From Dendrobates tinctorius (Eukaryota): a stretch of DNA of 64,000 nt. This document shows positions 2,726-37,950 of this stretch, one piece after another; positions within the stretch are counted from its first letter, which is position 1; each line of letters begins with the position of its first letter. Under the pieces are notes generated by a model. It searched no databases. It was given only the letters and a program-made list of their open reading frames with translations, and was not told the origin of the DNA. The stretch lies in contig NW_027361754.1 of the NCBI RefSeq assembly GCF_039654945.1, positions 20,832,001 to 20,896,000 of the forward strand, given 5' to 3'. The translations under genes and the position numbers were made by a program.

Positions 2726-2938
2726 CTATAAAAGAAAACGGTGTGAAGGAAAAATAATTGAAATCAACATAAGTTATAATTTGTAAACAGGGCTGTGGAG
2801 TCGGAGTCGTGGAGTCAGAGTTAGTTTTGGTTGGAGTCGGAGTCGGAAGAAATGTACCGACTCCAGCTTTAAAAAAAAATGTATTAATATTTCATAATTG
2901 AACTTTCATATGAATTTTATAAATGTTACTCAAATATA

Positions 2939-4159
2939 CACTCACTGGCCACTTTATTAGGTACACCATGCTAGTAAGGGGTTGGACCCCCTTTTGCCTT
3001 CAGAACTGCCTCAATTCTTCGTGGCAGAGATTCAACAAGGTGCTGGAAGCATTCCTCAGAGATTTTGGACCATATTGACATGATGGCATCACACAGTTGG
3101 CGCAGATTTGTCGGCTGCACATCCCTGATGCGAATCTCCCGTTCCACCACATCCCAAAGATGCTCTATTGGATTGAGATCTGGTGACTGAGGAGGCCATT
3201 TGAGTACAGTAAACTCATTGTCATGTTCAAGAAACCAATCTGAGATGATTCGAGCTTTATGACATGGCGCCTTATCCTGCTGAAAGTAGCCATCAGATGT
3301 TGGGTACATTGTGGTCATAAAGGGATGGACATGGTCAGCAACAATACTCAGGTAGGCTGTGGCGTTGCAACGATGCTCAATTGGTACCAAGGGGCCCAAA
3401 GAGTGCCCAGAAAAAATTCCCCACACCATGACACCACCACCACCAGCCTGAACCGTTGATACAAGGCAGGATGGATCCATGCTTTCATGTTGTTTACGCC
3501 AAATTCTGACCCTACCATCCAAATGTCGCAGCAGAAATCGAGACTCATCAGACCAGGCAACGTTTTTCCAATCTTCTACTGTCCAATTTCGATGAGCTTG
3601 TGCAAATTGTAGCCTCAGTTTCCTGTTCTTAGCTGAGAGGAGTGGTACCCAGTGTGGTCTTCTGCTGCTGTAGCCCATCTGCCTCAAAGTTCGACGCACT
3701 GTGCGTTCAGAGATGCTCTTCTGCCTACCTTGGTTGTAACGGGTGGCAATTTGCGTCACTGTTGCCTTTCTATCAGCTCGAACCAGTCTGCCCATTCTCC
3801 TCTGACCTCTGGCATCAACATGGCATTTCCGGCCACAGAACTGCCGCTCACTGGATTTTTTTTCTTTTTCGGACCATTCTCTGTAAACCCTAGAGATGGT
3901 TGTGCGTGAAAATCCCAGTAGATCAGCAGTTTCTGAAATTCTCAGACCAGCCCTTCTGGCACCAACAATCATGCCACGTTCAAAGGCACTCAAATCACCT
4001 TTCTTCCCCATACTGATGCTCGGTTTGAACTGCAGGAGATTGTCTTGACCATGTCTACATGCCTAAATGCACTGAGTTGCCGCCATGTGATTGGCTGATT
4101 AGAAATTAAGTCTTAACACACAGTTGGACAGGTGTACCTAATAAAGTGGCCAGTGAGTG
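2939..4159 (-). mobile_element. Tc1/mariner DD36E (Incomer-type) transposon, 1221 bp
   Basis: Perfect 29-bp TIRs CACTCACTGGCCACTTTATTAGGTACACC; TA on both flanks; contains a 346-aa transposase. Confidence 0.95.
2971..4011 (-). CDS. Tc1-like transposase, 346 aa, DD36E triad
   Basis: Paired-like HTH N-terminus; [21 protein letters not shown]; 36 residues counted between the second D and E. Confidence 0.95.
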
Positions 4160-4614
4160 TATATGTTCTATCAAACTATCACAACAGTGATAAGCAGTTC
4201 TGCTGGAGATAGAGACATTTCTTACTTCTTGTGTGTCACTGTTCTCCACTGCCCTTATCTAATCTTATACTTGGTTAACCTCATGCTGCCCCAACCCCCC
4301 TACTTACAATGTATGAAACTGAAAGTGAAAATGTGTTGCAAATTCTTAGTAGTAAAGCTCCTCCTCTAGACTAGATCATACTAGGTGTGCGTCTTCCAAG
4401 CATCTCACAGCTGCCTGCTACTCAGAAGAGGAAGACTGTAAGAAGTATTATCCTTTCAACAAACTTTGCATCAGTTAACTGTGAGTACATGAGGAATAGT
4501 AACAGTATTACTGACCACTATATCAGTTGTACGACCTGGCAATAATTTTGTACAATTGTTTTTAGGAAAAACAATTGTCATTTGGATTGTGAATGCAGAA
4601 TTAAAAACCTGAGA

Positions 4615-6624
4615 ATGTCAAAGCAGCATCACATTAAATCAGCTGTATTTGAACATTTCACCATCACTCAAGATAGAAAACATTATGTCTGTCAGTGTAT
4701 GACAAATGATCCAGACGAAAACAAATGCTGTGAAGCCAAGATGAGTGCATATTCAGGCAAAGATAAAAATGCTCCTACCAGAGCTTCTAATCTAAAGAGA
4801 CATTTACAGTGCTTTCATCCAGAAGTACTGAAAGCAGTGGATGAGAAAGACTGCATCCAAACCAATGAACCAGTGCCCAGCTCTTCCAGCCAAACAAAGG
4901 AGCAGAGAACTTTGCAGCCATCAGTTGCAAGATATTTTGTCAGTGACAAAGTTACTGTGACAATGACAGTAGATACATTTAAAAAACAGATCATAGAGCT
5001 TGTTGTAAAGGATAGTGTGCCTATTTCATTATTTTCACGACCAGCTTTTATGTGTCTGAATGGGGAAATGGCCCGCAAGCTTGGTGTTTCTCTGGAGAGA
5101 GAGAGTATTAGAAAATTAGTAATCGAAGAAGCTTTTAAACAAAAGGAAGAACTTAAAAAAACTCTCAAGGGACGCTTTCTGTTTCTTAAAATGGATGCCT
5201 GCACACGTCACAGAGTGAACTATTTTGCCATCAATGTCCGATTTGTTTGCGACAAAAATGAAATAGTTACCAAGACATTGGCAGTAAAATACACCAAAGC
5301 TCATCACACCAGTGAGTTTCTCCAGGTCTTGGTGGAAAAGGTTCTGCAAGACTATGAACTTAAAAAAGAGCAAGTTCTTTCTGTCGTAACTGACAATGCT
5401 TCAAATATAAGTACTATTAAGCTAATGAATGAGAGTAATGATGGTGACCAGCAGCTAGAAGAACATTCTGGGTCCACAGACACAGAAATGTTTGAAATAG
5501 AGGAACACAGTATTATAACTGAGGAGCAAACTGAAGTTGCTTCAGATGAACAGCAACATGATAGTTTAGATGATCTTGTTGAAACTGTGTCAATATGTTC
5601 TTTCATTCATCACATGCGCTGTGTTGTGCATACGCTACAGCTGGCTATAAGAGACAGTCTGCAAGAAGGACATGCTGCTGCACTGATTGGCAAGGTGAGA
5701 AAATTGGCTACTGTTGCCAGAACCCCTAAAGTTGACTCAATTTTGAAGAGACGTGCTGGAAAAGGGGCAATTATTGATCAAGCCACACGATGGGGCAGTA
5801 CTTACTTAATGATTCAGCGCTTGGTTGAACTGAAAACCTTTCTTGTAGACATGGCTAACCCACAACTGACGCTAAATGAAAGTCAATGGAATCAGGTGAC
5901 TGAGCTGGAAAAATTGCTAGAGCACCCATTTACAGTGACTAAAAAATTACAAGCAGAGGACTTAACTCCAGGTATTTTCTTAAAGGAGTGGAAGAACCTG
6001 ATCTTTCGCCTGTCCCAAAGAGGAGGGTTAATTGCAAGTGGCATTGCTACATCAATGAAACGGAGAGAGGAGCTACTATTACAAAATAACATTCTTTTGG
6101 CAGCTGTTTATGTAGACCCAATGCATCGGATTCTTCTAGATGATCAACAGCTAAGTAAAGGAAAAGAAGCTCTGTTTGAAATAGCAGTAAGAATGAAAGG
6201 GTTGCAGAACAGTCAGGAGGAACAAGACGACTTTGGTTGTCCTGCCACATCTTCACCCTCATCATCAACTGATGAAGAATTTAATTTCGAAAAATATTTG
6301 GATCACAAGAACCGTGCAAAGCGTTCCCGCATAGAAGAGTCATCCCCATCAAGGAACACAGCCAGTACATTTCAGCAGAATTTTTCATGTGCACTAAAAG
6401 AAATTGAGAAATTTGACCGTTCATCAAAAATAACAGAGCAACAAGCGATTCCTCTGTATCCTGACATTGTCAGAGATGTTGCCCGAGTGGTTACTGCTTT
6501 GCCACCAACACAAGTTAGTGTAGAGAGGTTGTTCTCTGCTCTCAAAATAATTAGATCAGATTTGAGGGCATCCATGAAGGAGGATCTGACAGAGGCAATA
6601 CTTTTTCTGAGGACAAATTTATAG
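4615..6624 (+). CDS. hAT transposase (BED zinc finger, DDE core, C-terminal dimerisation region), uninterrupted ORF, 669 aa from first ATG
   Basis: BED-like C..C..NLKRHLQCFH; KMDACT, VTDNAS, CVVH (CxxH), TRWGST, VERLFS motifs. Confidence 0.9.
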   Translation: MSKQHHIKSAVFEHFTITQDRKHYVCQCMTNDPDENKCCEAKMSAYSGKDKNAPTRASNLKRHLQCFHPEVLKAVDEKDCIQTNEPVPSSSSQTKEQRTLQPSVARYFVSDKVTVTMTVDTFKKQIIELVVKDSVPISLFSRPAFMCLNGEMARKLGVSLERESIRKLVIEEAFKQKEELKKTLKGRFLFLKMDACTRHRVNYFAINVRFVCDKNEIVTKTLAVKYTKAHHTSEFLQVLVEKVLQDYELKKEQVLSVVTDNASNISTIKLMNESNDGDQQLEEHSGSTDTEMFEIEEHSIITEEQTEVASDEQQHDSLDDLVETVSICSFIHHMRCVVHTLQLAIRDSLQEGHAAALIGKVRKLATVARTPKVDSILKRRAGKGAIIDQATRWGSTYLMIQRLVELKTFLVDMANPQLTLNESQWNQVTELEKLLEHPFTVTKKLQAEDLTPGIFLKEWKNLIFRLSQRGGLIASGIATSMKRREELLLQNNILLAAVYVDPMHRILLDDQQLSKGKEALFEIAVRMKGLQNSQEEQDDFGCPATSSPSSSTDEEFNFEKYLDHKNRAKRSRIEESSPSRNTASTFQQNFSCALKEIEKFDRSSKITEQQAIPLYPDIVRDVARVVTALPPTQVSVERLFSALKIIRSDLRASMKEDLTEAILFLRTNL

Positions 6625-7029
6625 ATTTCTTCTTATTAACTGCATAAAAGTGTTTATTGCATATTTACTTCCAGTTTAGAAAAGTTTATAAAAGTTATTT
6701 GCTATATTCTAATTGTATTCTAATAAATGTAGTTTTTGCTCTAAGTGGTCTGATTACTTATATGATGGTGAGAAACTGAATAAGCACGATGTTTAATATT
6801 TTACAACAGTAAATTTGTTGTTATGAATTGGCCATTTATGAAGGTGTCGGAGCCTGATAAAATCCAGGAGTCGGAGTCGCAACTGTGGCTTACCGACTCC
6901 ACAGCCCTGTAAATTTTCTTTTATTCCGAAGAATTTGCAGAGTGATACTTTAGGCAAAAGATAAAAAACAATAGTTTAATATGTGCTGTTTGAAACCCGA
7001 TCTAAAATTCTGATTTTTCTCTTGTGAGA

Positions 7030-7950
7030 GTGTCTCTCCCAGTAACCTAGGCTGGATGCAAGGTCTGTGTGTCTCTGCCAGTAATAAAGGTTGGATGTGA
7101 GCTCTGCATGTCTCTCCCAGTAATATAGGCTGGATGTGAGCTCTGCATGTCTCTCCCAGTAATATAGGCTGGATGTGAGCTCTGCATGTCTCTCCCAGTA
7201 ATATAGGCTGGATGTGAGCTCTGCATGTCTCTCCCAGTAATATAGGCTGGATGTGAGCTCTGCATGTCTCTCCCAGTAATATAGGCTGGATGTGAGCTCT
7301 GCATGTCTCTCCCAGTAATATAGGCTGGATGTGAGCTCTGCATGTCTCTCCCAGTAATATAGGCTGGATGTGAGCTCTGCATGTCTCTCCCAGTAATATA
7401 GGCTGGATGTGAGCTCTGCATGTCTCTCCCAGTAATATAGGCTGGATGTGAGCTCTGCATGTCTCTCCCAGTAATATAGGCTGGATGTGAGCTCTGCATG
7501 TCTCTCCCAGTAATATAGGCTGGATGTGAGCTCTGCATGTCTCTCCCAGTAATATAGGCTGGATGTGAGCTCTGCATGTCTCTCCCAGTAATATAGGCTG
7601 GATGTGAGCTCTGCATGTCTCTCCCAGTAATATAGGCTAGATGTGAGCTCTGCATGTCTCTCCCAGTAATATAGGCTAGATGTGAGCTCTGCATGTCTCT
7701 CCCAGTAATATAGGCTGGATGTGAGCTCTGCATGTCTCTCCCAGTAATATAGGCTGGATGTGAGCTCTGCATGTCTCTCCCAGTAATATAGGCTGGATGT
7801 GAGCTCTGTGCATCTCTCCCAGTAATATAGGCTGGATGTGAGCTCTGCATGTCTCTCCCAGTAATATAGGCTGGATGTGAGCTCTGTGCATCTCTCCCAG
7901 TAATATAGGCTGGATGCCAGGCCTGTGTGTCCCTCCCTGTAATACAGGCT
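7030..7950. repeat. 39-bp minisatellite (TCTCTCCCAGTAATATAGGCTGGATGTGAGCTCTGCATG), about 23 copies, highly homogeneous
   Basis: Direct inspection; 13-aa periodicity in the spurious ORFs. Confidence 0.97.
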
Positions 7951-8045
7951 GGAGCCATATCCTCCTCCTTCTCCTCTCGCTTCCTCAAACTCACTGTGGA
8001 CAAATCTGAACCACCATCTTTCCTCCATCTCACAGATCTTCCTTA

Positions 8046-8383
8046 GGCTATGTTCATATTGCGTTAGAGCAGTCCGTTCAATGCATGCGTTAAACAGACT
8101 GCACTAACGCAACTCTTTATTTTTGATCGTGTTATGCGATCGCGCTAGCGCAGATGCTCCATCCATGCGCTAGCAGTGACGGACCCTCGAAGGCTGCAGA
8201 CTGCGTCCAAGGGTTCATCACAGAATGATGGCACATCGCTAATGTATGCCGATTATGACATGCGTTAGCGATGCACTACGTTATGGCAGTCTATGGGTGC
8301 GTTAACGCATCCTTACATAGCATTAATGCTGCTATATAACGGATGCGTTAAACGCAGCGCCATAACACAATATGAACCCAGTC
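8046..8383. mobile_element. PIF/Harbinger-type MITE
   Basis: Imperfect TIRs GGCTATGTTCATATTG / CAATATGAACCCAGTC; TTA on both flanks. Confidence 0.75.
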
Positions 8384-8384
8384 T

Positions 8385-9297
8385 TACCTGACCTATGACA
8401 ATTAACGACATCACGCTTTCCCTCCATACCAGAAGTCCGCTGCCTCGGAGCAACCCTCGATTCTGCCCTGTCCTTCAAACCACTCATCTAAGCTCTTTCC
8501 TCCTCCTGTCGCATCCAGCTCAAAAATATCTCCAGAATCCGTCCTTTCCTCAATCTACTAAAAATGCTTGTGCATGCCCTCACCATCTCCCACCTTGACT
8601 ACGGCAACATCCTTTTCTGTAGCCTCTCTGCTAACACCCTCGCACCTCTCAGTCCATCTTTAACTCTGCTGCCCGACTAATTTATCTCTCTCCTCGCTAC
8701 TCCTCTGCAAATCTCTTCACTGGCTCCCATTCCCTCAGCGTATCCAGTTCAAATTACTAACACTGACCTACAAAGCCATCTATAGCCTGTCTCTTCCATA
8801 TATCTCTGAACTAATCTCCCCATATCTTCCCTCACGTAATCTCCGGTCCTCCTAAGATCTCCTCTCCTCCACACTTACTTGCGCCTCACCCAATCGCCTC
8901 CAAGACTTCTCCCGAATAGACCCCATCCTCTGGAATTCTTTACCCCACCATGTCCGACTATCAACCACTTTTGGATCCTTCAGACGGAACCTGAAAACCC
9001 ATCTATTCAGGAAAGCCTACAGCCTGCAATGATCCCCGCTGCCTCCTCACCACTACCGGAACTTACGCATCACCAACACCAGAGCTGTAGCAACCCCCCA
9101 ACCTACTGTCTCCTTCACCACTATCCTGTAGAATGTAAGCCTGCAAGGGCAGGGTCCGCTCTCCCCTCTGTATCAGTCTGTGATTGTTAGTTTGTTTACT
9201 GTAAGTGGATATCTGCACATTAGTATGTAACCCCCCTTCTCATGTGCAGAACCATGGAATCAATGGTGCTACATAAATAAATAATGAAAATAATAAT
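8385..9297 (+). mobile_element. L2-type LINE 3' fragment, degenerate
   Basis: Degraded RT C-terminal sequence homologous to the other L2 pieces in the window; ends in an AAATAAATAAT tail. Confidence 0.75.
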
Positions 9298-9545
9298 GTT
9301 AGCTCTTTGTGTCTCACCCTGTAATATAGGCTGGATGTGAGCTCTGTGTGTCTCCCAGTAATACAGCTTGGATGTGAGCTATGTGTGTCTCCTCCAGTAA
9401 TATATGCAAAACACAAGCCGCGGAGACACCATCACATGTTTCTCAACGCAAGCAATGACTAGCCAGGTCTTTCCCCGGGAAGGAACAACCACGGGAAGGG
9501 CAGTCTCCAATGAAGGAAACCACCTATGCCAAAACATGGTATCCA

Positions 9546-9589
9546 TCCACAAACAGCTGTTTCGGGGTATTGCCCCTCATCAGTGTGGA
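9546..9589 (-). ncRNA. Minimal type I hammerhead ribozyme, copy 1 (GUU cleavage triplet)
   Basis: UCCACA-CUGAUGA-GGGG caaua CCCC-GAAAC agcu GUU-UGUGGA. Confidence 0.88.
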
Positions 9590-9896
9590 GTAGGAAACTG
9601 GCTAGTAGGAGCAATGCCTAGTAAAAAACTGTGAAAAATGAGGATGAATGAACTCATGGAGATCAACATCCAACACTGCGGAGACACCATCACGTTTCTC
9701 AACGCAGAGATTCTAGAGCAATGCCCCCATTCCTTATGGGAAATATGCAAAAACATGCAAAACACAAGCCGTGGAGACACCATCACATGTTTCTCAACGC
9801 AAGCAATGACTAGTCAGGTCTTTCCCCGGGAAGGAACAACCACAGGAAGGGCAGTCTCCAATGAAGGAAACCACCTATGCCAAAACATGGTATCCA

Positions 9897-9940
9897 TCCA
9901 CAGACAGCTGTTTCGGGGTATTGCCCCTCATCAGTGTGGA
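9897..9940 (-). ncRNA. Minimal type I hammerhead ribozyme, copy 2 (canonical GUC triplet)
   Basis: UCCACA-CUGAUGA-GGGG caaua CCCC-GAAAC agcu GUC-UGUGGA; all core nucleotides and stems I-III intact. Confidence 0.93.
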
Positions 9941-10230
9941 GTAGGAAACTGGCCAGTAGGAGCAATGCCTAGTAGAAGACTGTGAAAGACTGGGGAAAGA
10001 CCTGGCTAGTCATTGCTTGCGTTGAGAAACATGTGATGGTGTCTCCGCAGCTTGTGTGTTGCATGTTTTTGCATATTTCCCATAAGGGTGGGGGCATTGC
10101 TCTAGAATCACTGTGTTGAGAAACATGTGATGGTGTCTCCGCAGTGTTGGATGTTGATATCCATGAGTTCATTCATCCTCATTTTTCACAGTCTTCTACT
10201 AGGCATTGCTCCTACTGGCCAGTTTCCTAC

Positions 10231-10274
10231 GCCACACTGATGAGGGGCAATACCCCGAAACAGCAGTCTGTGGA
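10231..10274 (+). ncRNA. Minimal type I hammerhead ribozyme, copy 3 (GUC triplet, loop III AGCA variant)
   Basis: CCACA-CUGAUGA-GGGG caaua CCCC-GAAAC agca GUC-UGUGG. Confidence 0.88.
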
Positions 10275-11570
10275 TGAATACCATGTTTTGGCATAGGTGG
10301 TTTCCTTCATTGGAGACTGCCCTTCCCGTGGTTGTTCCTTTCCGGGGAAAGACCTGGCTAGTCATTGCTTACGTTGAGAAACATGTGATGGTGTCTCCAC
10401 GGCTTGTGTTTTGCATGTTTTTGCATATTTCCCATAAGGGATGGGGGCATTGCTCTAGAATCACTGCGTTGAGAAACATGCGATGGTGTCTCCGCAGTGT
10501 TGGATGTTGATCTCCATGAGTTCATTCATCCTCATTCCTCCAGTAATATAGGCTGGATGTGAGCTATTTGTGTCTCCTCCAGTAACATAGGCTGGATGTG
10601 AGCTCTGTGTCTCTCCTCCAGTAATATAGGCTGGATGTGCGCTCTGTGTGTCTCCTCCAGTAATATAGGCTGGATGTGAGGTATGTGTGTCTCCCCCAGT
10701 AATATAGGCTGAAAGTGAGCTCTGTGTCTCTCCCTGTAATATGGGGTGGATGCGAGCTGTGAGTGTCTCCTCCAGTATTATAGGCTGGATGTGAGCTATG
10801 TGTGTCTCCCCTAGTAATATAGGTTGAAAGTGAGCTCTGTGTCTCTCCCTGTAATTTGGGGTGGATGCGAGCTGTGAGTGTCTCCTCCAGTAATATAGGC
10901 TGGATATGAGCTATGTGTGTCTCCTCCAGTAATATAGGCTGGATGTGAGCTCTGTGTGTCTCCTCCAGTAATATAGGCTGGATGTGAGCTCTGTGTGTCT
11001 TCCCCAGTAATATAGGCTGAAAGTGAGCTCTGTGTCGCTCCCTGTAATATGGGGTGGATGCGAGCTGTGAGTGTCTCTCTATGTAATTTGGTTGGATGTG
11101 AGCTGTGTGTATATCCAGGGTGCTGCAGTATTCAATTGCTCATATATCAACACAGCTTCTATCCTGCACTCTCTACTTGTTAATGTGCTTTCTTCCTTCT
11201 TTTTAGCCATTTTTCTCTGCTCTCCCTGAGACTGTAGATACTTTCTCCCCTATCTATAACCCTACTTTCTCTCCTCTCCATAACCCTTTACTTTAAAGCC
11301 AGGTTATACATTTTCCACCAGAGATATTGCAAATAATCCACAGCAAAATCAACATATATTACATATTAATTTTTTGGTAAATCTACCATAGTTTGTTTTT
11401 TTTAATTGGGACCATGTGATACCACATCTTCCCTGCAGTGGTGGATGGATGCCACAGCGTCTATCCAGGCTGTGCCCGCTGTCACAGAGGCACAACATGA
11501 GCGTGTACACCTTGTAATAGCTGATAACACTGTGTGCACTAGACCTAATTCTCTTCCATCCGTTACTTAC

Positions 11571-17478: not shown

Positions 17479-18547
17479 CTATCTGAGAACAACGTGTAAA
17501 CGCCTTGGCAGCTCATCCCGAAGCTGCAGCTGCATCGCCAGCGCCGATCTGTAACTCAGCGCTCGGTCACAGGACTGATATTTCAGCCGGTAACACAGAC
17601 CAGTTCTCCCAGTTTCAGTATTTTTATACAGATCCAGAAGCTGAATATCCATGATGTTTCCCTTTGACATTTGCAACGCTACGGTGTGAAACTCGACGTC
17701 ATCAAATGCGGCGTTCTCCTCCACCCAAAAACTAACATCGTGGATATAATAAGGGGGATATAGGGAGAACGTCTGGTGAGGTTTTAGGTCACGATGATGG
17801 AACTGGGCTCCGAATCTGTCATCCTCTGTCCATAGCAGTCGCCAGTCTTCAATCCTGAGCAGACACATGGCGAGTAAATCTAAATTCAGGGATACTATGA
17901 AAGTTTTGGGCTGACCTCCGGCGGGGACCTCTTTGATCGTCCCTATCATCCAGTCAGGATTAGCAGGTGACATGGTGACGATATAATCTTTTTCCAGATG
18001 AAACGTTATTTTCTCACTACTTACAGTTTCCATAGATATGATGGACGCCATCACTGTGCTCATGGTGTCCATCACCAGTTGGAGCTGTTCTCGGCAATCC
18101 AACAACATGAGCATCTCATGATAAATCGGCATGGACTGCGGAGATATCAGACACTTCCTAAAGACAAGGCCGCTCACGACGGTCAGAGAATTTGGTCTGC
18201 AGTTGGATTTATGAGAAATGTCGCTGATAAAACACGTCAGCGTCGGTCTCAGATGATGGAGCCCCGCCGTCCGATTATTATCTGGGTGAGCTGCCTCAAC
18301 AGAACATAAGTGTGTCGTGTGTAAATCATCAGAAATCTCTGATCCTTCCTTCTCTGTACCAGCAGTCACAGTGTAAAGTTTGGAGTGAGACGCTAAATAT
18401 GGGGGACGAGAAGAACAAGCATCATTGCGACAAATTAGAGGAAAAGTGTCTTCCAAAACGTTCACCTGAAGCTTCTGATGAAAACACTTCACCAGCTCTT
18501 TATAGATTACACCGATGGGGTGAAGAGATGTTTTACCTAGGAAACCC
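17479..18547 (-). CDS. FDXACB1: FDXACB1 last coding exon (PheRS-like region and ferredoxin-fold anticodon-binding domain)
   Basis: SLNLDLLAM, DWRLLWT, SLYPPYYIHDVSFW and LCYRLKYQSCDRAL match vertebrate FDXACB1; CAG acceptor at 18548; TAG stop. Confidence 0.95.
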
Positions 18548-25066: not shown

Positions 25067-28000
25067 TTAAACGTGCGTTTTGGTCTTAGTTGAGGGAGGG
25101 AAGTACTTTTGCCTCCCGACAGCTTTGGATATCATTGTATCCAGCTTTTCACCGAAAAGACGGCCACTGAAGTACGGGAGATTTGTTAGGGACTTTTTTG
25201 AGGCCGCATCCGCTTTCCATTCTCTTAGCCAGAGAATACGCCGGATTGTGATGGCGTTTGATGCTATTCCTCTTGCAGAGTCCAACGCTGCATGGACCAT
25301 GTAATCTGCCACCACTGCAATTTGCACCGCCTGGTCCGCCAGCTGAGGATTTGAAGCTTGAAGGCCCTTTTGCAATAGATCAGCCCAAGCCATGATGGCC
25401 TTGGCTGCCCAAACTGAAGCAAATGCGGGAGCCAAAGAGGCACTTGCCGCTTCAAAGATTGAATGAGCCATGCGTTCGACTTGTCTGTCTGCTGTGTCCT
25501 TGAGGGTTGAACTGTCCGGCAGCGTTTGTGCTGCCAGCCTAGAGACTGGAGGGTCCACTTCAGGCGGATCTGTCCAATCCTTGGTGTCTTTCTGTGGAAA
25601 GGGGTATTTTGCTTCCAAATACTTGTGATGGGCGAATTTTTTCTCAGGCTGCGAAAAATGCTTAGAAAGGATTTTTTGAAATTCCGGGTGATTAGGGAAG
25701 ACCTTCGATGGTTTCTGAAGACTTTCAAAGGAAATCTTGTGTTCTGGTGCTTCCGGGGTTGGATCTGAAATGTCCAGCACCCGAAGGATGGAAGAGACGA
25801 TATCCTCAACTATCGCAGTATTGCTAGGGGGACAAGGTAGCAAAGCGTTCTCTGTTTCGTTATCTGAATTGGAGTCACATATGCCCTCTGAGTCCTGCGC
25901 ATCGCTAAGGAGCTCCCTAGCGGGCGAACTAGAGCGGAGGTTTCCCGTGGTCTGGGATCGTTGTGGAGATCCGCATTGTCCTTCTCTATCAGGGGACGGC
26001 CTCGGTGACCTGAGGCCACTGTGTCTTTCCCTGGAGGGGGAAGACCTATTGCTATGTGAGGACGCAGATGAATGCGACCTGTGGGTCCGCTTACGCCTCG
26101 AACTGTCGGAAGCGCCCTGATCATGAGACCGGACGTCCCTTTGCTGGGTAACGTTCATAGCCGTGACATGACCCTGTAGAGCCTGCAGTAATGTGGAGGT
26201 CAGGTTATCTATAGATTGTGTCATAGACTGCGACATCTGAGTCGCCCATTCCGGCGCAGTAGCGGTCGCAGAAGCATTGGTAGGGACTTCTTGGGGTTCT
26301 GATCCTGTTTGGGAGAAATGGGAGAAAGGATCTCCAGAAGCATTTGTGATCGTAATGGGGGACTTTAACAAAGGAAAACTCAACCTGGATCTCCCCAAAT
26401 TTACTCAACATATAAACTGCTTCACGAGAGAGAACAATACGCTTGATCACTGCTATACAGTCGTAAAAGGGGCCTACAGGGCAGTGAGGAGAGCAGCAGT
26501 GGGCTTTTCAGATCATTGTCTAATTCATTTAATTCCAGCCTACAGGCAAAGGTTGAAAACATCCAAACCTACAGTTTATACAAAGAAGACATGGTCTGAG
26601 GAGGCAAAATTGCAACTACAAGCATGCTTTGAATGCACGGACTGGGAGGTATTCCAGGAAACATGCTCGGGTCTGGATGAATGGGTTGATGCAGTGTCCT
26701 CATATATCCGTTTTTGTGAAGACACGTTTATTCCATCCAAATCTATCCACTTTCGGGGAAACAACAAGCTGTGGTTTACAAATAAAGTCAGGTTGATCCG
26801 TAAGAGAAAAGAGGAGGCTTATAAAGCAGGCGATATTACTGAATTCAAGAAGCTTAGGAACTCGCTATCTAAAGAGATCAAGTTAGCCAAACACGAGTAT
26901 GCAAAGATTCTGGAGGAAAGGTTCTCATCAAAAGATACTAGATCTGCATGGAGAGGATTAAGAGAGGTCACCAATTATAAAAGCCACCCCACTATAGTGA
27001 ACCCCAGCAGAAGTCTGGCAGCAGAGTTAAATGAATTCTACTGCAGATTTGAGGCAAGCTCTACACACAGTGGCTATTCATCTCTAAGCTCCTCAGTCTG
27101 TTCATATAAAGATCATTCATTGTGCAACACCCAAGTAGTGATCTCCGAGGCAGAGGTGATACGCATCCTGAAGGGACTTAAGGTCAAAAAGGCACCTGGC
27201 CCTGATGGTGTATCTCCAATGTGTCTGAAAGTATGTGCTACCCAGCTTGCCCCTATACTGACAAATATATACAATGTGTCACTGAAAGAGTGCGTTGTAC
27301 CTCAGTGTTGGAAAAATTCCACAATTATCCCTGTCCCCAAGAAAGTGGGATCCTCTGAGTTGAACGACTATAGACCAGTAGCACTCACATCTGTAGCTAT
27401 GAAAGTCTTTGAAAGAATTATGATGTCCCACCTGATAAAATTCAGGCAGAAGCTATGGGACCCGCTTCAGTTTGCCTATAAGGAGAATCGTTCGGCAAAC
27501 GACACTGTCAATCTGGCACTGAAGTACATTTTGGATCATACAGATGAACTGCACTCGTATGTCCGGATTCTTTTCATGGACTTTAGCTCAGCGTTCAATA
27601 CCATTGATCCGAATTTACTTCATAAGAAAATGGTAGCTCTTGGAGTCCCTCTCAACTTATGCTTGTGGATTTATAACTTCCGGACAGCCAGGATACAGAG
27701 TGTAAAAGTTGGACCATTCACTTCGGACACCTTGGTCACAAACATCGGGGCACCTCAGGGGTGTGTTTTGTCCCCGTTACTGTTTTCTCTCTATACGAAT
27801 GATTGCATCTCTTCAGCAGACTCAGTAAAAATCTTGAAATTTGCCGATGATATGACACTGATTGGTCTCATCGGGGGAAATGCTGAAGACTTGTATCGGA
27901 GTGAGGTGAAAAGAATATGTGACTGGTGTAAAGCCAATAATCTTGTACTCAACACTAAAAAAACTGCTGAGATGGTTGTGGATTTTAGGAAAGATCAACA

Positions 28001-28767
28001 TGAGATACTTCCAATCTACATCCATGACGAAGTGGTTCTTAGGGTCACAGAGACCAAATTCCTTGGTGTTATCATCTCTCATGATCTTAAATGGGGGAAA
28101 AACGTGGATGCTGTTATAAGAAAAGCACAACAGAGGATGTTCTTCCTGCGTCAGCTGAAAAGATATGGTTTGTCTAAGAATCTGCTGATCTTATTCTTTA
28201 ATGCTGTCATCAGATCTGTGATTTGTTCCTCTCTGATAGTCTGGTATGGGGGAGCCACTGCGCATGACAAACTCCGCTTACAAAGGACTTTCAGAACAGC
28301 AGAGAGAAAATTATAGGTTCCCCCCTGCCTAAAATCCAGGATCTTTATGATAAGAGTATTCGATCCCACGCATTGAAAATTTCATCCGATCCCTCTCACC
28401 CGGGACACTCCTCATTCCAACTACTCCCTTCAGAGTCCCCAAATGCAGCACCAACCGCCATATGAACAGCTTCTATCCACTCTCTGTTCAACAATTAAAT
28501 CGTCATGTGTAGACTATATACTGTATCTGTCTTGTTAGATGTTACTTGTTGTATCTGTTGTTATATATTATGTTGCCTCTTTGCCACAAAGAATTCCTTG
28601 TATATATGTAATATGTACTTGGCGATAATAAATTTGATTGATTGATTGTTTTTTTGGGTACAATCCCGGCAGTGCGGGTACGTGCTGCTGCTGGGGAGAG
28701 TGGCCTTGCAGGCTGTGCAGACTGCATAAAAGCAGTCTTGCCTGGTTCTTTTCCTTGAGCCCGACAT
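25067..28767 (-). pseudogene. DIRS gag split by a LINE insertion
   Basis: MSGSRKRT…CTAC…HCRDCTQ (28767-28653) continues in frame as TGSEPQEVP… once the LINE and one TSD copy are removed; RRILWLREW and LFGEKLD motifs. Confidence 0.85.
26314..28652 (+). mobile_element. 5'-truncated Rex1/Babar-like LINE (APE C-terminus plus RT)
   Basis: GDFN, TLDHCY, SDH; GAPQGCVLSPLLF, KFADD; AATAAA then (GATT)n tail; TTTGGG duplication; ORF ends early at 28316 after an apparent GA slippage. Confidence 0.9.
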
Positions 28768-32859: not shown

Positions 32860-33040
32860 TACCTGCCAGTCACCCCCTGCAGCGCACACAGCCGCAGTCA
32901 CCGGCGGACGGCTACAACCACGTGACTCCTTCCTGCAGCTACTTCCGGGTTCTGCGGCGCACGCTGATGACGTCATGATCTGTTACTAAGCAACACAGCA
33001 ACAAAACCGGCGTTGGGTTCCTCAACCGATACCCGGGTAC
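32860..33040. promoter_or_regulatory. Putative bidirectional FDXACB1/CFAP68 promoter with non-coding first exons
   Basis: E-box CACGTG 32919-32924, ETS ACTTCCGG 32941-32948, CRE TGACGTCA 32968-32975; minus-strand donor CAG|GTAAGT at 32862 and plus-strand donor CGG|GTACGT at 33037. Confidence 0.7.
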
Positions 33041-33187
33041 GTGCAGGCGTTTTTCCAGCGCTTGTGGTGATGGGGGAGAATCCTGACTGGCTGTAATAAT
33101 GTACAGTACTGGGAGGAGTACAGTACAGAGGATGGACATGGTGGAGGCTGATGGCAGAGTGTGAGGAGGGAAAGGGGGAAATGTGCT

Positions 33188-36100
33188 GTCCTGGTGATAA
33201 ATATACCGCCCTGGGGATAAATATACCGCCCTGGTGATGAATATACCGCCCTGGGATGAATATACCGTCCTGGGGATGAATATACCGTCCTGGTGATAAA
33301 TATACCGCCCTGGTAATGAATATACCGCCCTGGGATGAATATACCGTCCTGGGGATGAATATACCGTCCTGGTGATAAATATACCGCCCTGGTGATAAAT
33401 ATACCGTCCTGGGGATGAATATACCGTCCTGGTGATAAATATACCGTCCTGGTGATGAATATACCGCCCTGGTGATGAATATACCGCCCTGGTGATGAAT
33501 ATACTGTCCTGGTGATAAATATACCGCCCTGGTAATGAATATACCGCCCTGGGATGAATATACCGTCCTGGTGATGAATATACCGTCCTGGTGATAAATA
33601 TACCGTCCTGGTGATGAATATACCGCCCTGGTGATAAATATACCGCCCTGGTGATGAATATACCGCCCTGGTGATGAATATACCGTCCTGGTGATAAATA
33701 TACCGCCCTGGTAATGAATATACCGCCCTGGGATGAATATACCGTCCTGGTGATGAATATACCGTCCTGGTGATAAATATACCGCCCTGGTGATGAATAT
33801 ACCGTCCTGGGATGAATATACCGCCCTGGTAATGAATATACCGCCCTGGGATGAATATACCGTCCTGGTGATGAATATACCGTCCTGGTGATAAATATAC
33901 CGTCCTGGTGATGAATATACCGCCCTGGTGATAAATATACCGCCCTGGTGATGAATATACCGCCCTGGTGATGAATATACCGTCCTGGTGATAAATATAC
34001 CGCCCTGGTAATGAATATACCGCCCTGGGATGAATATACCGTCCTGGGGATGAATATACCGTCCTGGTGATGAATATACCGTCCTGGTGATAAATATACC
34101 GTCCTGGTGATGAATATACCGCCCTGGTGATGAATATACCGTCCTGGTGATAAATATACCGCCCTGGTAATGAATATACCGCCCTGGGATGAATATACCG
34201 TCCTGGGGATGAATATACCGTCCTGGGATGAATATACCGTCCTGGTGATAAATATACCGTCCTGGTGATGAATATACCGCCCTGGTGATGAATATACCGT
34301 CCTGGTGATAAATATACCGCCCTGGTAATGAATATACCGCCCTGGGATGAATATACCGTCCTGGGGATGAATATACCGTCCTGGTGATAAATATACCGTC
34401 CTGGGATGAATATACCGTCCTGGTGATAAATATACCGTCCTGGGGATGAATATACCGTCCTGGTGATAAATATACCGTCCTGGGATGAATATACCGCCCT
34501 TGTGATGAATATACCGTCCTGGTGATAAATATACCGTCCTTGTGATGAATATCCCGCCCTGGGGATACATATACTGTCCTGGGGATGAATATACCGCCCT
34601 GGTAATGAATATACTGCCCTGGGATGAATATACCATCCTGGGGATGAATATACCGTCCTGGTGATAAATATACCGTCCTGGGATGAATATACCATCCTGG
34701 TGATAAATATACCGTCCTGGGGATGAATATACCATCCTGGTGATAAATATACCGTCCTGGGATGAATATACCGCCCTGGTGATGAATATACCGTCCTGGT
34801 GATGAATATCCCGCCCTGGGGATACATATACCGTCCTGGTAATGAATATACCGCCCTGGGATAAATATACCGTCCTGGTGATGAATATACCGCCCTGGTG
34901 ATGAATATACCGCCCTGGGATGAATATACCGTCCTGGTGATAAATATACCGCCCTGGGATGAATATACCGTCCTGGGGATGAATATACCGTCCTGGTGAT
35001 AAATATACCGGCCTGGGATGAATATACCGTCCTGGTGATAAATATACCGCCCTGGGGATACATATACCGTCCTGGGGATGAATATACCGTCCTGGTGATA
35101 AATATACCGCCCTGGGATGAATATGCCGTCCTGGTGATAAATATACCGCCCTGGTGATGAATATACCGTCCTGGTGATAAATATACCGCCCTGGTGATGA
35201 ATATACCGTCCTGGTGATAAATATACCGCCCTGGGATGAATATACCGTCCTGGTGATAAATATACCGCCCTGGGATGAATATACTGTCCTGGTGATAACT
35301 ATACCGCCCTGGTGATGAATATACCGTCCTGGTGATAAATATACCGTCCTGGTGATGAATATACCGCCCTGGTGATGAATATACCGTCCTGGTGATAAAT
35401 ATACCTCCCTGGTAATGAATATACCGCCCTGGGATGAATATACCGCCCTTGTGATGAATATACCGTCCTGGTGATAAATATACCGTCCTTGTGATGAATA
35501 TCCCGCCCTGGGGATACATATACCGTCCTGGGGATGAATATACCGCCCTGGTAATGAATATACTGCCCTGGGATGAATATACCGTCCTGGGGATGAATAT
35601 ACCGTCCTGGTGATAAATATACCGTCCTGGGATGAATATACCGTCCTGGTATAAATATACCGTCCTGGGGATGAATATACCGTCCTGGTGATAAATATAC
35701 CGTCCTGGGATGAATACACCGCCCTGGTGATGAATATACCGTCCTGGTGATAAATATACCGTCCTGGTGATGAATATCCCGCCCTGGGGATACATATACC
35801 GTCCTGGTAATGAATATACCGCCCTGGGATAAATATATCGTCCTGGTGATGAATATACCGCCCTGGGATGAATATACCGTCCTGGTGATAAATATACCGC
35901 CCTGGGATGAATATACCGTCCTGGGGATGAATATACCGTCCTGGTGATAAATATACCGCCCTGGGATGAATATACCGTCCTGGTGATAAATATACCGCCC
36001 TGGGGATACATATACCGTCCTGGGGATGAATATACCGTCCTGGTGATAAATATACCGCCCTGGGATGAATATGCCGTCCTGGTGATAAATATACCGCCCA

Positions 36101-37950
36101 GGTGATGAATATACCGTCCTGGTGATAAATATACCGCCCTGGTGATGAATATACCGTCCTGGTGATAAATATACCGTCCTTGTGATGAATATCCCGCCCT
36201 GGGGATACATATACCGTCCTGGGGATGAATATACCGCCCTGGTAATGAATATACTGCCCTGGGATGAATATACCGTCCTGGGGATGAATATACCGTCCTG
36301 GTGATAAATATACCGTCCTGGGATGAATATACCGTCCTGGTATAAATATACCGTCCTGGGGATGAATATACCGTCCTGGTGATAAATATACCGTCCTGGG
36401 ATGAATATACCGCCCTGGTGATGAATATACCGTCCTGGTGATAAATATACCGTCCTGGTGATGAATATCCCGCCCTGGGGATACATATACCGTCCTGGTA
36501 ATGAATATACCGCCCTGGGATGAATATACCGTCCTGGTGATAAATATACCGCCCTGGGATGAATATACTGCCCTGGTGATAACTATACCGCCCTGGTGAT
36601 GAATATACCGTCCTGGTGATAAATATACCGTCCTGGTGATGAATATACCGCCCTGGTGATGAATATACCGTCCTGGTGATAAATATACCGCCCTGGTAAT
36701 GAATATACCGCCCTGGGATGAATATACCGCCCTTGTGATGAATATACCGTCCTGGTGATAAATATACCGTCCTTGTGATGAATATCCCGCCCTGGGGATA
36801 CATATACCGTCCTGGGGATGAATATACCGCCCTGGTAATGAATATACTGCCCTGGGATGAATATACCGTCCTGGGGATGAATATACCGTCCTGGTGATAA
36901 ATATACCGTCCTGGGATGAATATACCGTCCTGGTATAAATATACCGTCCTGGGGATGAATATACCGTCCTGGTGATAAATATACCGTCCTGGGATGAATA
37001 TACCGCCCTGGTGATGAATATACCGTCCTGGTGATAAATATACCGTCCTGGTGATGAATATCCCGCCCTGGGGATACATATACCGTCCTGGTAATGAATA
37101 TACCGCCCTGGGATAAATATACCGTCCTGGTGATGAATATACCGTCCTGGGGATGAATATACCGTCCTGGTGATAAATATACCGCCCTGGTGATGAATAT
37201 ACCGTCCTGGTGATAAATATACCGTCCTGGTGATTAATATCCCGCCCTGGGGATACATATACCGTCCTGGTAATGAATATACCGCCCTGGGATAAATATA
37301 CCGTCCTGGTGATGAATATACCGTCCTGGGGATGAATATACCGTCCTGGTGATAAATATACCGCCCTGGGATGAATATACCGTCCAAGTGATAAATATAC
37401 CGCCCTGGGGATACATATACCGTCCTGGGGATGAATATACCGTCCTGGTGATAAATATACCGCCCTGGGATGAATATGCCGTCCTGGTGATAAATATACC
37501 GCCCAGGTGATGAATATACCGTCCTGGTGATAAATATACCGCCCTGGTGATGAATATACCGTCCTGGTGATAAATATACCGCCCTGGGATGAATATACCG
37601 TCCTGGTGATAAATATACCGCCCTGGGATGAATATACTGTCCTGGTGATAAATATACCGCCCTGGTGATGAATATACCGTCCTGGTGATAAATATACCGC
37701 CCTGGGATGAATATACCGTCCTGGTGATAAATATACCGCCCTGGGATGAATATACCGTCCTGGTGATAAATATACCACCCTGGTGATGAATATACCGTCC
37801 TGGTGATAAATATACCGCCCTGGGATAAATATACCGTCCTGGTGATAAATATACCGCCCTGGGATGAATATACCGTCCTGGTGATAAATATACCGTCCTG
37901 GAGATGAATATACCATCTTGGTAATGACTATACCGTCCTGGTGATGTATA
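33188..37950. repeat. 19-20-bp satellite (TATACCG[T/C]CCTGGTGAT[G/A]AA), about 240 units
   Basis: Direct inspection; repeated multi-unit variant blocks. Confidence 0.98.

What the first reader, a model, noticed from the sequence alone, without database searches (positions are those of the whole stretch)
9404..10536. Hammerhead-ribozyme repeat element (retrozyme-like, 351-nt unit) in ALG9 intron 2
Seen: a non-coding 351-bp unit repeated about 3.2 times. Each full unit has a complete hammerhead core: stem I UCCACA/UGUGGA, CUGAUGA, stem II GGGG-caaua-CCCC, GAAA, and a 2-bp stem III whose palindromic ACAGCUGU could pair between copies. The triplets are GUC (9897-9940, 10231-10274) and GUU (9546-9589). 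Each unit also holds two copies of a ~30-nt motif, GCGGAGACACCATCACATGTTTCTCAACGCA. Known: minimal type I hammerheads with palindromic stem III occur in Penelope-like elements, newt satellite 2 and metazoan non-LTR retrozymes; they cleave as dimers and release monomers that can circularise. Inference: this is a non-autonomous, self-cleaving, probably circular-RNA-forming mobile element. The ORF track and ordinary gene annotation miss it. Whether this family is already described cannot be judged from the sequence.
Basis: partly seen in the sequence, partly recalled or inferred. Interest (0 to 1): 0.92.

Follow-up and report, generated by a model that had tools for sequence, protein, structure and literature searches.

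The report
Hammerhead-ribozyme retroelement, flipped insertion in ALG9 intron
A non-coding 351-letter repeat carrying a self-cutting RNA motif sits in an intron of the frog ALG9 gene as two back-to-back arms copied from one long RNA; it is a clean new example of an already described class of amphibian jumping elements.

Summary
The sequence features are real, but the layout was mis-described. Positions 9405-10536 hold 3.2 unit-lengths of a non-coding 351-nt repeat. Each full unit has a complete type-I hammerhead: 6-bp helix I, 4-bp helix II, and a 2-bp helix III with a palindromic loop.

It is not a 3.2-copy tandem array. About 1.66 units lie on the minus strand (9405-9987) and 1.55 on the plus strand (9992-10536). 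Their 5' ends meet at a 4-nt filler.

The right arm's 3' end and the left arm's 5' end are adjacent positions of the unit. Joined, the arms give one seamless 1128-nt, 3.2-unit sequence. I read this as reverse transcription primed from both nicked DNA strands on one RNA. The insert carries a 15-bp flanking duplication inside a 39-bp minisatellite, within an ALG9 intron.

This is the known insertion style of Penelope-like elements. The element matches published amphibian "non-LTR retrozymes".

The inferred template ran uncleaved through three ribozyme sites. Related contigs are abundant in runs of three organism labels, with family consensus triplet GUC. Self-cleavage and RNA circles could not be tested, because only contigs were available. 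Rfam scores it 20.2 bits against a threshold of 34.

This scan has noted similar insertions elsewhere in the same genome. It is a new member of a known kind.

The parts
9390..9404 (.). Left copy of the putative 15-bp target-site duplication (TCCTCCAGTAATATA), part of the 39-bp minisatellite
   Evidence: Identical 15-mer at 10536-10550. Removing the insert plus one copy restores the minisatellite phase. A 24-bp deletion with no duplication would give the same phase.
9405..9987 (-). Left arm: 1.66 units, hammerhead-sense on the minus strand. It runs from unit position 269 at the centre to position 148 at the outer end.
   Evidence: Direct repeat with period 351; register alignment; blastn of the unit against the window
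9546..9589 (-). Hammerhead A: complete core, triplet GUU, predicted cut between 9552 and 9551
   Evidence: Family contigs mostly carry C at 9552 in the sense strand, i.e. GUC.
9897..9940 (-). Hammerhead B: the best-preserved copy, triplet GUC, palindromic helix III ACAGCUGU, predicted cut between 9903 and 9902
   Evidence: Rfam Hammerhead_1 aligns to model positions 1-45 of 45 at 20.2 bits.
9988..9991 (.). 4-nt filler (GACT) at the junction of the two arms' 5' ends
   Evidence: It matches neither arm's unit sequence
9992..10536 (+). Right arm: 1.55 units, hammerhead-sense on the plus strand. It runs from unit position 76 at the centre to position 268 at the outer end. The last T could instead belong to the target duplication.
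   Evidence: Direct repeats with period 352-353 and inverted repeats against the left arm; register alignment
10231..10274 (+). Hammerhead C: core intact and triplet GUC, but the first helix I pair is broken and the helix III palindrome is lost (ACAGCAGU). Predicted cut between 10268 and 10269.
10536..10550 (.). Right copy of the putative 15-bp target-site duplication
10018..10048 (-). One of seven copies of the ~31-nt internal motif, two per unit. The others are at 9420-9450 (+), ~9678-9706 (+, with a 2-nt deletion), 9771-9801 (+), 10112-10142 (-), 10370-10400 (-) and 10465-10495 (-).
   Evidence: It is an internal duplication of about 29 nt at unit positions 102-130 and 197-223.
9296..9404 (.). 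Left part of the 37-39-bp minisatellite that received the insertion
   Evidence: Tandem Repeats Finder
10536..11110 (.). Right part of the same minisatellite: about 15 copies, period 39
   Evidence: Tandem Repeats Finder
2726..11570 (-). ALG9 intron that hosts the insertion, with a GT donor at 11570 and an AG acceptor at 2726
   Evidence: The flanking exons 11571-~11699 and 2591-2725 match Glyco_transf_22 positions 2-31 and 33-75, and PDB ALG9

Best explanation
This is one old, now inert insertion of a non-autonomous retroelement. The element's 351-nt non-coding unit carries a canonical metazoan type-I hammerhead ribozyme. It fits the class 'non-LTR retrozyme', a passenger of Penelope-like elements (PLEs).

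Inferred mechanism:
1. A PLE-type endonuclease and reverse transcriptase nicked both strands of a minisatellite, 15 bp apart.
2. Each 3' end primed reverse transcription on the same RNA.
3. One cDNA started at unit position 148 and ran 583 nt, up to position 269.
4. The other cDNA started at position 268 and ran 545 nt, to position 76.
5. The two cDNA ends were joined through a 4-nt filler.

The result is two inverted arms. Re-joined, they make one seamless 3.2-unit sequence of 1128 nt. The template was most simply a linear, uncleaved multimer transcript. Since insertion the copy has decayed by about 1.7%.

What is shown and what is inferred:
- Shown: the motif, the arm geometry, the adjacency of the arm ends, the flanking repeat, and the family's abundance.
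- Inferred: the PLE machinery as mobiliser, the linear rather than circular template, and the ribozyme's activity as a dimer through its palindromic helix III.
For: Hammerhead motif:
- Complete core and helices at three sites, with none in shuffled sequence.
- Two-molecule folding pairs the 8-nt palindromes of two copies into an extended helix III.
- Rfam Hammerhead_1 aligns end to end.
- The 351-nt monomer's minimum-energy fold closes helix I and forms helix II.

Arm geometry:
- Period 351-353 within each arm, and 94-97% complementarity between the arms.
- The arms' outer 3' ends lie at unit positions 148 and 268, and their central 5' ends at 269 and 76.
- The right arm's end (268) and the left arm's start (269) are adjacent. 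A 120-nt window across the virtual join aligns without gaps, 117 of 120 identical, to an uninterrupted unit. The chance of this for two independent events is roughly 1-3 in 351.

Target site:
- A 15-bp direct repeat flanks the insert, and the reconstructed empty site is in phase with the minisatellite.

Family:
- Contigs from four runs under three organism labels cover the unit at 85-99% identity.
- All four runs show head-to-tail joints of 351 nt.
- The majority triplet is GUC.

An unrelated repeat shares only the ribozyme:
- A 626-nt tandem repeat in a lake metagenome contig shares about 57 nt with this unit, and that stretch is the hammerhead.
- Three helix I pairs are changed on both sides, and its helix III is a different palindrome.

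Literature:
- PLE insertions are partial tandems with an inverted 5'-truncated copy, and favour microsatellites (PMC8557442).
- A purified PLE protein nicks and extends both strands. It starts reverse transcription internally without homology to the target, and it uses unprocessed multi-copy RNA (PMC11167929).
- Amphibian retrozymes have units of about 330-350 nt with weak helix III hammerheads that cleave as dimers (PMC7229834).
- Vertebrate retrozymes derive from the pseudo-LTRs of PLEs (10.64898/2026.07.22.740005).
Against: - No PLE reverse transcriptase or GIY-YIG gene was found among the ten largest ORFs of the window. I could not compare the unit with PLE pseudo-LTRs of this genome, or with Repbase or Dfam.
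- Rfam reports nothing at gathering score. Hammerhead_1 reaches 20.2 bits against 34.
- The target duplication lies in a 39-bp repeat, so a 24-bp deletion without duplication would look the same.
- No RNA evidence was obtained. All runs offered were contigs, the RNA label of two of them is a guess, and no molecule ends were reported.
- The variant sites listed within the family are not rarer in the hammerhead (2 in 44 nt) than in the rest of the unit (6 in about 313 nt). Both hammerhead sites are tolerated positions, namely position 17 and loop 2. Eighteen further variant sites were not shown. Preferential core conservation within the family is therefore not demonstrated.
- In a published test, only 1 of 9 Xenopus retrozyme dimers self-cleaved in vitro (10.64898/2026.07.22.740005).
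Confidence: 0.78

Rival explanations
1. The element and machinery are the same, but the template was a 351-nt circular RNA copied by rolling-circle reverse transcription, as in the published retrozyme model, and not a linear multimer.
For: - Both arms are longer than one unit and start at permuted positions. A circle explains this naturally.
- The published model proposes that target-primed circles give tandem cDNA (PMC7229834).
- Substitutions private to each unit are spread evenly: 6, 4, 8 and 0 over 278, 353, 351 and 148 nt. This fits units that were identical at insertion.
Against: - On a circle, the first cDNA must pass the second priming site once and then stop exactly there on the second lap.
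- The second reverse transcriptase must also displace 545 nt of the first cDNA. A linear 3.2-mer needs neither step.
- In vitro, unprocessed RNA is the dominant PLE substrate and hammerhead cleavage is dispensable (PMC11167929).
- No end of the insertion lies at the cleavage and ligation site.
Confidence: 0.2
2. It is a fragment of an autonomous Penelope-like element, namely a stack of its pseudo-LTRs, and not a separate non-autonomous family.
For: - Hammerheads sit in PLE pseudo-LTRs (PMC4209133).
- PLE insertions are usually 5'-truncated and can retain only terminal repeats (10.64898/2026.07.22.740005).
Against: - The inferred template is 3.2 consecutive units with no ORF sequence between them.
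- Head-to-tail 351-nt joints recur in contigs of all four runs.
- The hammerhead has the 'canonical' type-I architecture that the papers assign to retrozymes, not the minimal variant typical of PLE pseudo-LTRs (PMC4209133, PMC7229834).
Confidence: 0.1
3. It is ordinary satellite DNA that expanded by unequal crossing-over and was then partly inverted by a DNA rearrangement, with no retrotransposition.
For: Retrozyme multimers behave like satellites and cluster near centromeres and telomeres (10.64898/2026.07.22.740005). The host site is itself a minisatellite.
Against: - The insert interrupts the minisatellite in phase, with a 15-bp flanking repeat.
- The arms' ends are adjacent in unit register.
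- The junction is not a symmetric fold-back: the centre ends lie at unit positions 269 and 76.
- The family is dispersed and abundant.
Confidence: 0.05
4. The inverted layout is an assembly artefact, a palindromic chimera of long reads.
For: Complex tandem and inverted PLE structures are known to trouble assemblies (PMC8557442).
Against: - The arms differ at 3-6% of positions, and also by indels.
- They end at different unit positions and join through a 4-nt filler, not on a symmetry axis.
Confidence: 0.02
5. It is a domesticated intronic ribozyme pair that regulates ALG9 pre-mRNA.
For: Hammerheads A and B are on the pre-mRNA strand, 351 nt apart, and could pair through the palindrome.
Against: - Hammerhead A has drifted from the family triplet, and hammerhead C is decaying at a neutral-looking rate.
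- In the predicted pre-mRNA fold, the antisense arm, which is transcribed first, sequesters hammerhead A in a hairpin with 417 inter-arm base pairs.
- Retrozymes are depleted from introns (10.64898/2026.07.22.740005).
Confidence: 0.03

Closest known systems
Amphibian non-LTR retrozymes (axolotl Rtz_353 with HHR_Amex2; newt satellite 2; Xenopus families such as REP4_XT)
   Same: - Non-coding head-to-tail units of about 330-350 nt, with GC below 50%.
- One type-I hammerhead per unit: 6-bp helix I, 4-bp helix II, and a 1-2-bp helix III capped by a small palindromic loop. It is expected to cleave as a dimer.
- Flanking duplications longer than 4 bp.
- Co-occurrence with PLEs.
(PMC7229834, PMC4209133, 10.64898/2026.07.22.740005)
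   Different: - Sequence relatedness to any named family could not be tested, because Repbase and Dfam were not available.
- Cleavage and circular RNA are demonstrated for axolotl and for one Xenopus family, but not here.
- This copy is a short tandem-plus-inverted insertion in an intron, not a long array.
Penelope-like element insertion architecture (partial tandem plus inverted 5'-truncated copy)
   Same: - Tandem units with an adjacent inverted 5'-truncated copy, and insertion into a micro- or minisatellite (PMC8557442).
- Both DNA strands are nicked and extended, and reverse transcription starts internally without homology to the target (PMC11167929).
- No convincing microhomology appears at either outer junction of this locus.
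   Different: - The element has no reverse transcriptase/GIY-YIG ORF, and the ten large window ORFs scanned showed no GIY-YIG endonuclease and only a Gypsy and a LINE-like reverse transcriptase.
- I could not identify the 30-40-bp 'tail'.
- The hammerhead is the canonical type, not the minimal PLE type.
L1 twin priming (5'-inverted LINE-1 insertions)
   Same: The geometry is identical. The 3' ends point outward and the 5' ends meet in the middle. The outer end of the inverted segment is adjacent, in the RNA, to the inner end of the direct segment. The whole is flanked by a target duplication (my own knowledge of Ostertag and Kazazian 2001).
   Different: There is no poly(A) tail. The template is a repeat multimer, and a different enzyme family is presumed.
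Plant LTR retrozymes
   Same: They are also non-autonomous, bear hammerheads, and give rise to circular RNA (PMC4918200).
   Different: Plant retrozymes have type III hammerheads in LTRs, a primer-binding site and polypurine tract, 4-bp target duplications and mobilisation by Gypsy elements. None of these features is present here.

Membership tests
Hammerhead ribozyme, type I (canonical metazoan form) | Conserved catalytic core: CUGAUGA, GAAA, the A15.1-U16.1 pair, and a cleavage triplet ending in a base other than G | tested here: met
   All three copies have the full core, with triplets GUC, GUU and GUC
Hammerhead ribozyme, type I (canonical metazoan form) | Three-helix junction with open helix I (6 bp), helix II (4 bp, G10.1-C11.1), and a short helix III with a palindromic loop that allows a dimer | tested here: met
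   Descriptor scan. Two-molecule folding gives an 8-bp intermolecular helix III for copies A and B, while copy C has lost the palindrome. The architecture is as described in PMC4209133.
Hammerhead ribozyme, type I (canonical metazoan form) | Reaches the gathering score of Rfam RF00163 | tested here: not met
   No family reaches its gathering score in the window. Hammerhead_1 aligns to model positions 1-45 of 45 at 20.2 bits against 34. The field finds these weak helix III motifs with descriptors, not with Rfam models (PMC4209133, 10.64898/2026.07.22.740005).
Hammerhead ribozyme, type I (canonical metazoan form) | Helices kept by compensatory change across relatives | tested here: inconclusive
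   Compared with the one unrelated repeat that shares the motif (L001), three of six helix I pairs differ on both sides and still pair, and helix III is a different palindrome. That is a single comparison. Within-family variant data are incomplete.
Hammerhead ribozyme, type I (canonical metazoan form) | Site-specific self-cleavage | not testable with these tools
   Only contigs were offered, so no RNA ends could be seen
Metazoan non-LTR retrozyme | Non-coding head-to-tail units of about 170-400 nt, each with a type-I hammerhead, and at least two consecutive complete motifs | tested here: met
   The unit is 351 nt. Hammerheads A and B are consecutive on the minus strand, and each folds at -15.4 kcal/mol. 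There is no ORF over 115 aa and no Pfam hit. Head-to-tail joints appear in all four runs.
Metazoan non-LTR retrozyme | No LTR, primer-binding site or polypurine tract, GC below 50%, and target duplication longer than 4 bp when present | tested here: inconclusive
   GC is 46%. A 15-bp flanking repeat is present but lies within a minisatellite. Primer-binding site and polypurine tract were not searched for explicitly.
Metazoan non-LTR retrozyme | Expressed as unit-length linear and circular RNA | not testable with these tools
   Two runs guessed to be RNA hold contigs of the unit, but the label is a guess and contigs cannot show circles
Penelope-like-element-dependent insertion | Partial tandem plus an adjacent inverted 5'-truncated copy inside one target duplication | tested here: met
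   The architecture is as described in PMC8557442.
Penelope-like-element-dependent insertion | Sequence relatedness of the unit to the pseudo-LTR of an autonomous PLE in the same genome | not testable with these tools
   No access to the rest of the genome, Repbase or Dfam. The window's ten largest ORFs include no PLE gene.

The most novel reading that the evidence does not exclude
The locus may be a molecular fossil that speaks to an open question: what RNA do animal retrozymes use as their template? The two inverted arms are exactly adjacent in unit register, they re-join into a 3.2-unit sequence, and no end lies at the ribozyme cut site. If this pattern holds across the family's insertions, mobilisation would use long uncleaved multimer transcripts primed from both DNA strands. 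That matches what a purified Penelope-like protein does in vitro, and differs from the proposed route through cleaved and ligated unit-length circles. The hammerhead would then serve some step other than making the insertion template.
Probability: 0.3. Interest if true: 0.55.

Novelty: new member of a known kind. Interest (0 to 1): 0.3.

Why it matters
Hammerhead-bearing repeats in amphibians have been known since newt satellite 2. They were recast as retrozymes in 2020, and a 2026 preprint ties them to Penelope-like elements in frogs. The existence of such an element here is therefore expected.

The value of this copy is its clean anatomy: a bounded insertion, a flanking duplication, and two arms that fit together to the nucleotide. 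That gives a simple rule that can be checked across a genome, namely arm adjacency in unit register. Applied to all copies, the rule could show whether these elements are copied from multimeric transcripts or from RNA circles, and whether priming from both strands, so far seen in vitro, is the norm in vivo.

For ALG9 itself the insert is probably neutral. It does place a roughly 0.5-kb inverted repeat in the pre-mRNA, which could form double-stranded RNA.

Tried and rejected
- **Rfam.** Nothing at gathering threshold over the whole window. Over 2 kb at a permissive threshold, only Hammerhead_3 at 16 bits survived clan competition.
- **Other copies in public collections.** Exact scans for the 25-nt core string gave 0 hits in bacterial and archaeal genomes and 0 in viral contigs. 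Metagenomes gave one hit, L001, which is a different 626-nt repeat that shares only the ribozyme.
- **RNA ends and circles.** All 24 runs offered were assembled contigs. Read laying reported no places where molecules begin or end, and its depth figures are not copy numbers. The left flank, which I had meant to use as a single-copy baseline, is itself highly repeated.
- **Naming the species.** Two exact-protein look-ups found nothing. A homology search with the Tc1 transposase returned mostly fish proteins and did not help. Other agents of this scan call the genome a (dyeing) poison frog. I did not verify this.
- **The 2026 preprint's held supplements.** They contain no matching sequence strings.
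- **Snap-back (fold-back) reverse transcription.** Rejected, because the arms are not mirror images about the centre.
- **Microhomology-guided priming at the outer junctions.** At most 1 nt is shared.
- **A circle-spanning open reading frame.** Rejected, because every unit has a stop codon in the longest frame.
Full report
**What is in the sequence**

Positions 9405-10536 interrupt a 37-39-bp minisatellite that spans 9296-9404 and 10536-11110. The insert is built from a 351-353-nt unit. Tandem Repeats Finder reports no 351-nt array here, because the units are not all in one orientation.

The repeat finder gives direct repeats inside 9399-9987 and inside 9992-10536. It also gives 94-97% complementary inverted repeats between those two blocks. 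The insert is therefore two arms:
- 1.66 units whose ribozyme-sense strand is the minus strand (9405-9987);
- 1.55 units whose ribozyme-sense strand is the plus strand (9992-10536).

The arms are separated by four unassigned bases, GACT (9988-9991). The window contains no N and no further copy of the unit.

**The hammerhead**

The 25-nt string covering the core and helix II occurs exactly three times in the window. No shuffle produced it. I wrote a descriptor requiring:
- 5 bp of helix I;
- CUGAUGA;
- a helix II of at least 4 bp opening with G-C;
- GAAA;
- a helix III of at least 2 bp opening with A-U;
- a base other than G at position 17.

It finds only these three sites, and none in 300 Markov-1 shuffles of the window.

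The three copies compare as follows:

| Copy | Coordinates (strand) | Triplet | Condition |
|---|---|---|---|
| B | 9897-9940 (-) | GUC | Intact; helix III is the palindrome ACAGCUGU |
| A | 9546-9589 (-) | GUU | Otherwise intact |
| C | 10231-10274 (+) | GUC | First helix I pair and the helix III palindrome lost |

Folding two molecules together pairs the 8-nt palindromes of two copies into an extended helix III. This is the classical double-hammerhead arrangement. The 351-nt monomer, cut at the predicted site, folds with helix I closing the whole molecule and helix II formed. Its z-score against shuffles is -2.6, and the antisense strand scores similarly.

Rfam gives nothing at gathering score. 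On the 81-nt stretch around copy B, Hammerhead_1 aligns to model positions 1-45 of 45 at exactly 9897-9940 on the minus strand. The score is 20.2 bits against a threshold of 34.

The architecture (helix I 6 bp, helix II 4 bp, helix III 1-2 bp with a small palindromic loop) is what Cervera and de la Pena call the canonical metazoan type-I hammerhead (PMC4209133).

**Evidence from elsewhere**

I laid contigs of four public runs, under three coded organism labels, on 8900-9760.
- Thousands of contigs match at 85-99% identity.
- Up to the counting limit of 128 distinct contigs were counted at single variant sites; within the unit the counts are lower, up to 75.
- A head-to-tail joint of 351 nt (9754 back to 9404) appears in all four runs.
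- At 9552, about 84% of depth in the best DNA run carries the base that makes the triplet GUC. The GUU of copy A is thus a minority or private change.
- The only other listed variant inside the hammerhead is in loop 2 (9569).

The variant list is truncated, and the hammerhead does not show fewer variable sites than the rest of the unit. Preferential core conservation within the family is therefore not demonstrated.

A scan of metagenome contigs found one hit, L001 from a lake sample. It is a 626-nt tandem repeat. Only about 57 nt of it resemble this unit, at 81% identity, and those 57 nt are the hammerhead. Core, helix II and the flanks of helix I are conserved. Three of the six helix I pairs are changed on both sides yet still pair. 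Helix III is a different palindrome, ACCGGU. This shows that the ribozyme is the conserved module shared by two otherwise unrelated repeats.

**How the insertion arose**

I put all segments in one register, counting from the first base after the cleavage site.
- The right arm runs from unit position 76 at the centre to position 268 at the outer end.
- The left arm runs from position 269 at the centre to position 148 at the outer end.

Both arms therefore have their 5' ends in the middle and their 3' ends outside. The right arm's 3' end is the immediate neighbour of the left arm's 5' end.

Joining right arm plus left arm in silico gives 1128 nt, or 3.21 units, with no phase break. A 120-nt window over the join aligns without gaps, 117 of 120 identical, to an uninterrupted unit. 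This is the signature known from L1 twin priming (my own knowledge): two staggered nicks, each 3' end priming on the same RNA, with the first cDNA stopping where the second began. For two independent events the adjacency would have a chance of about 1-3 in 351.

The flanks carry the same 15-mer at 9390-9404 and at 10536-10550. Removing the insert and one copy restores the minisatellite phase. Because the 15-mer is part of a 39-bp repeat, a 24-bp deletion without duplication cannot be excluded.

Neither outer junction shows more than 1 nt of microhomology.

These features match published properties of Penelope-like elements:
- partial tandems with an adjacent inverted 5'-truncated copy, and a bias for microsatellites (PMC8557442);
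- a purified protein that nicks and extends both strands, starts reverse transcription internally at sites not homologous to the target, and uses unprocessed multi-copy RNA, with hammerhead cleavage dispensable (PMC11167929).

**Template**

The inferred template passes three hammerhead sites uncleaved, and none of its ends lies at the cut site. A linear multimer is the simplest reading.

A 351-nt circle copied by rolling-circle synthesis is not excluded. It would require the first cDNA to pass the second priming site once and then stop there, and the second enzyme to displace the first cDNA.

Substitutions private to each unit are 6, 4, 8 and 0 over 278, 353, 351 and 148 nt, about 1.7% overall. 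Many are at CpG sites. This is compatible with units that were identical at insertion and have since decayed neutrally. With the anuran rates quoted in PMC12822217 (10% divergence corresponding to 30-100 million years), that suggests an age of very roughly 5-17 million years. This is inference only.

**Context**

The flanking exons on the minus strand are 11571-~11699 and 2591-2725. They match Glyco_transf_22 positions 2-31 and 33-75, and residues 97-141 of the solved ALG9 structure. The intron has a GT donor and an AG acceptor and spans 2726-11570.

Hammerheads A and B are in pre-mRNA sense, and the antisense arm is transcribed first. The predicted fold of this pre-mRNA stretch is a hairpin with 417 inter-arm pairs. 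It buries hammerhead A completely. A regulatory role for ALG9 therefore looks unlikely.

The element has no ORF above 115 aa and no Pfam match. The window's ten largest ORFs include a Gypsy element, a LINE-like reverse transcriptase, Tc1 and hAT transposases and an FDX-ACB exon, but no PLE gene.

**Comparison with what is known**

- Metazoan non-LTR retrozymes have units of about 170-400 nt with type-I hammerheads. Amphibian ones need dimers to cleave well. The axolotl Rtz_353 family has a 350-nt unit and a 2-bp helix III with a tetraloop (PMC7229834).
- A 2026 preprint finds such elements in all seven amphibian genomes sampled. It counts 57 families in Xenopus, relates them to PLE pseudo-LTRs, and reports that only one of nine tested dimers cleaved in vitro (10.64898/2026.07.22.740005).

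This element meets the structural criteria. Expression, circles and cleavage remain untested here. I could not check whether this exact family is already in Repbase or Dfam.

Other notes of this scan describe several hammerhead or Penelope-type tandem-plus-inverted insertions with 13-16-bp duplications on other pieces of the same genome. They call the genome a poison frog. I did not verify the species.

**Verdict**

The ribozyme motif and the repeat are real, and the layout is corrected. The mechanism is best explained as a Penelope-type insertion primed from both strands on a multimeric retrozyme RNA. It is a new member of a known kind. Interest is modest, with some added value from the exact arm adjacency, which offers a testable rule for identifying the template.

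Noticed in passing
L001:1-1157 (lake metagenome contig TBL_comb48_EPIDRAFT_1067204): A 626-nt tandem repeat with a type-I hammerhead in each unit (core at 439-463 and 1065-1089). Triplet GUA, helix III palindrome ACCGGU. Outside the ribozyme it is unrelated to the frog unit. It is probably a retrozyme of some lake animal; the source organism is unknown.
   Followed up: partly
window 2971-4011 (-): An intact 346-aa Tc1-type transposase ORF inside the same ALG9 intron. It is 88-94% identical to Tc1 transposases of teleost fishes, which is high similarity for a frog-like genome. This may reflect horizontal transfer of this Tc1 lineage.
   Followed up: no
window 9296-9404 and 10536-11110: A 37-39-bp minisatellite of about 18 units in total, consensus starting TCCTCCAGTAATATAGG. 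It received the insertion. Contigs from the runs show many length variants of it (go-back joints of 33-45 nt).
   Followed up: partly
window 8900-9290: The stretch left of the minisatellite consists of very high-copy repeats in all four runs laid. Most family contigs differ from this copy at many sites. The repeat type was not identified.
   Followed up: no
window 32939-37965 (-): Several overlapping ORFs of 1482-1647 aa on the minus strand. The only Pfam signal is a diffuse DUF2633 match with no discrete stretch. This looks like a long stop-free repetitive or low-complexity region and not a normal gene.
   Followed up: no
window 17479-18492 (-): An ORF ending in a ferredoxin-fold anticodon-binding domain (FDX-ACB). 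This is consistent with FDXACB1, the neighbour of ALG9 in human (from my own knowledge). It would indicate conserved synteny.
   Followed up: no
window 39881-43946 (+), 26277-28316 (+), 4582-6624 (+): A Gypsy-type gag-protease-RT-RNaseH-integrase ORF, a LINE-like reverse transcriptase ORF, and a hAT transposase ORF. None is a Penelope-like element.
   Followed up: no
window 9450/9698 (joint seen in run X14): One contig joins 9450 to 9698 on opposite strands, at the two copies of the 31-nt internal motif. This could be another inverted insertion junction of the family, or a template switch at the motif.
   Followed up: no
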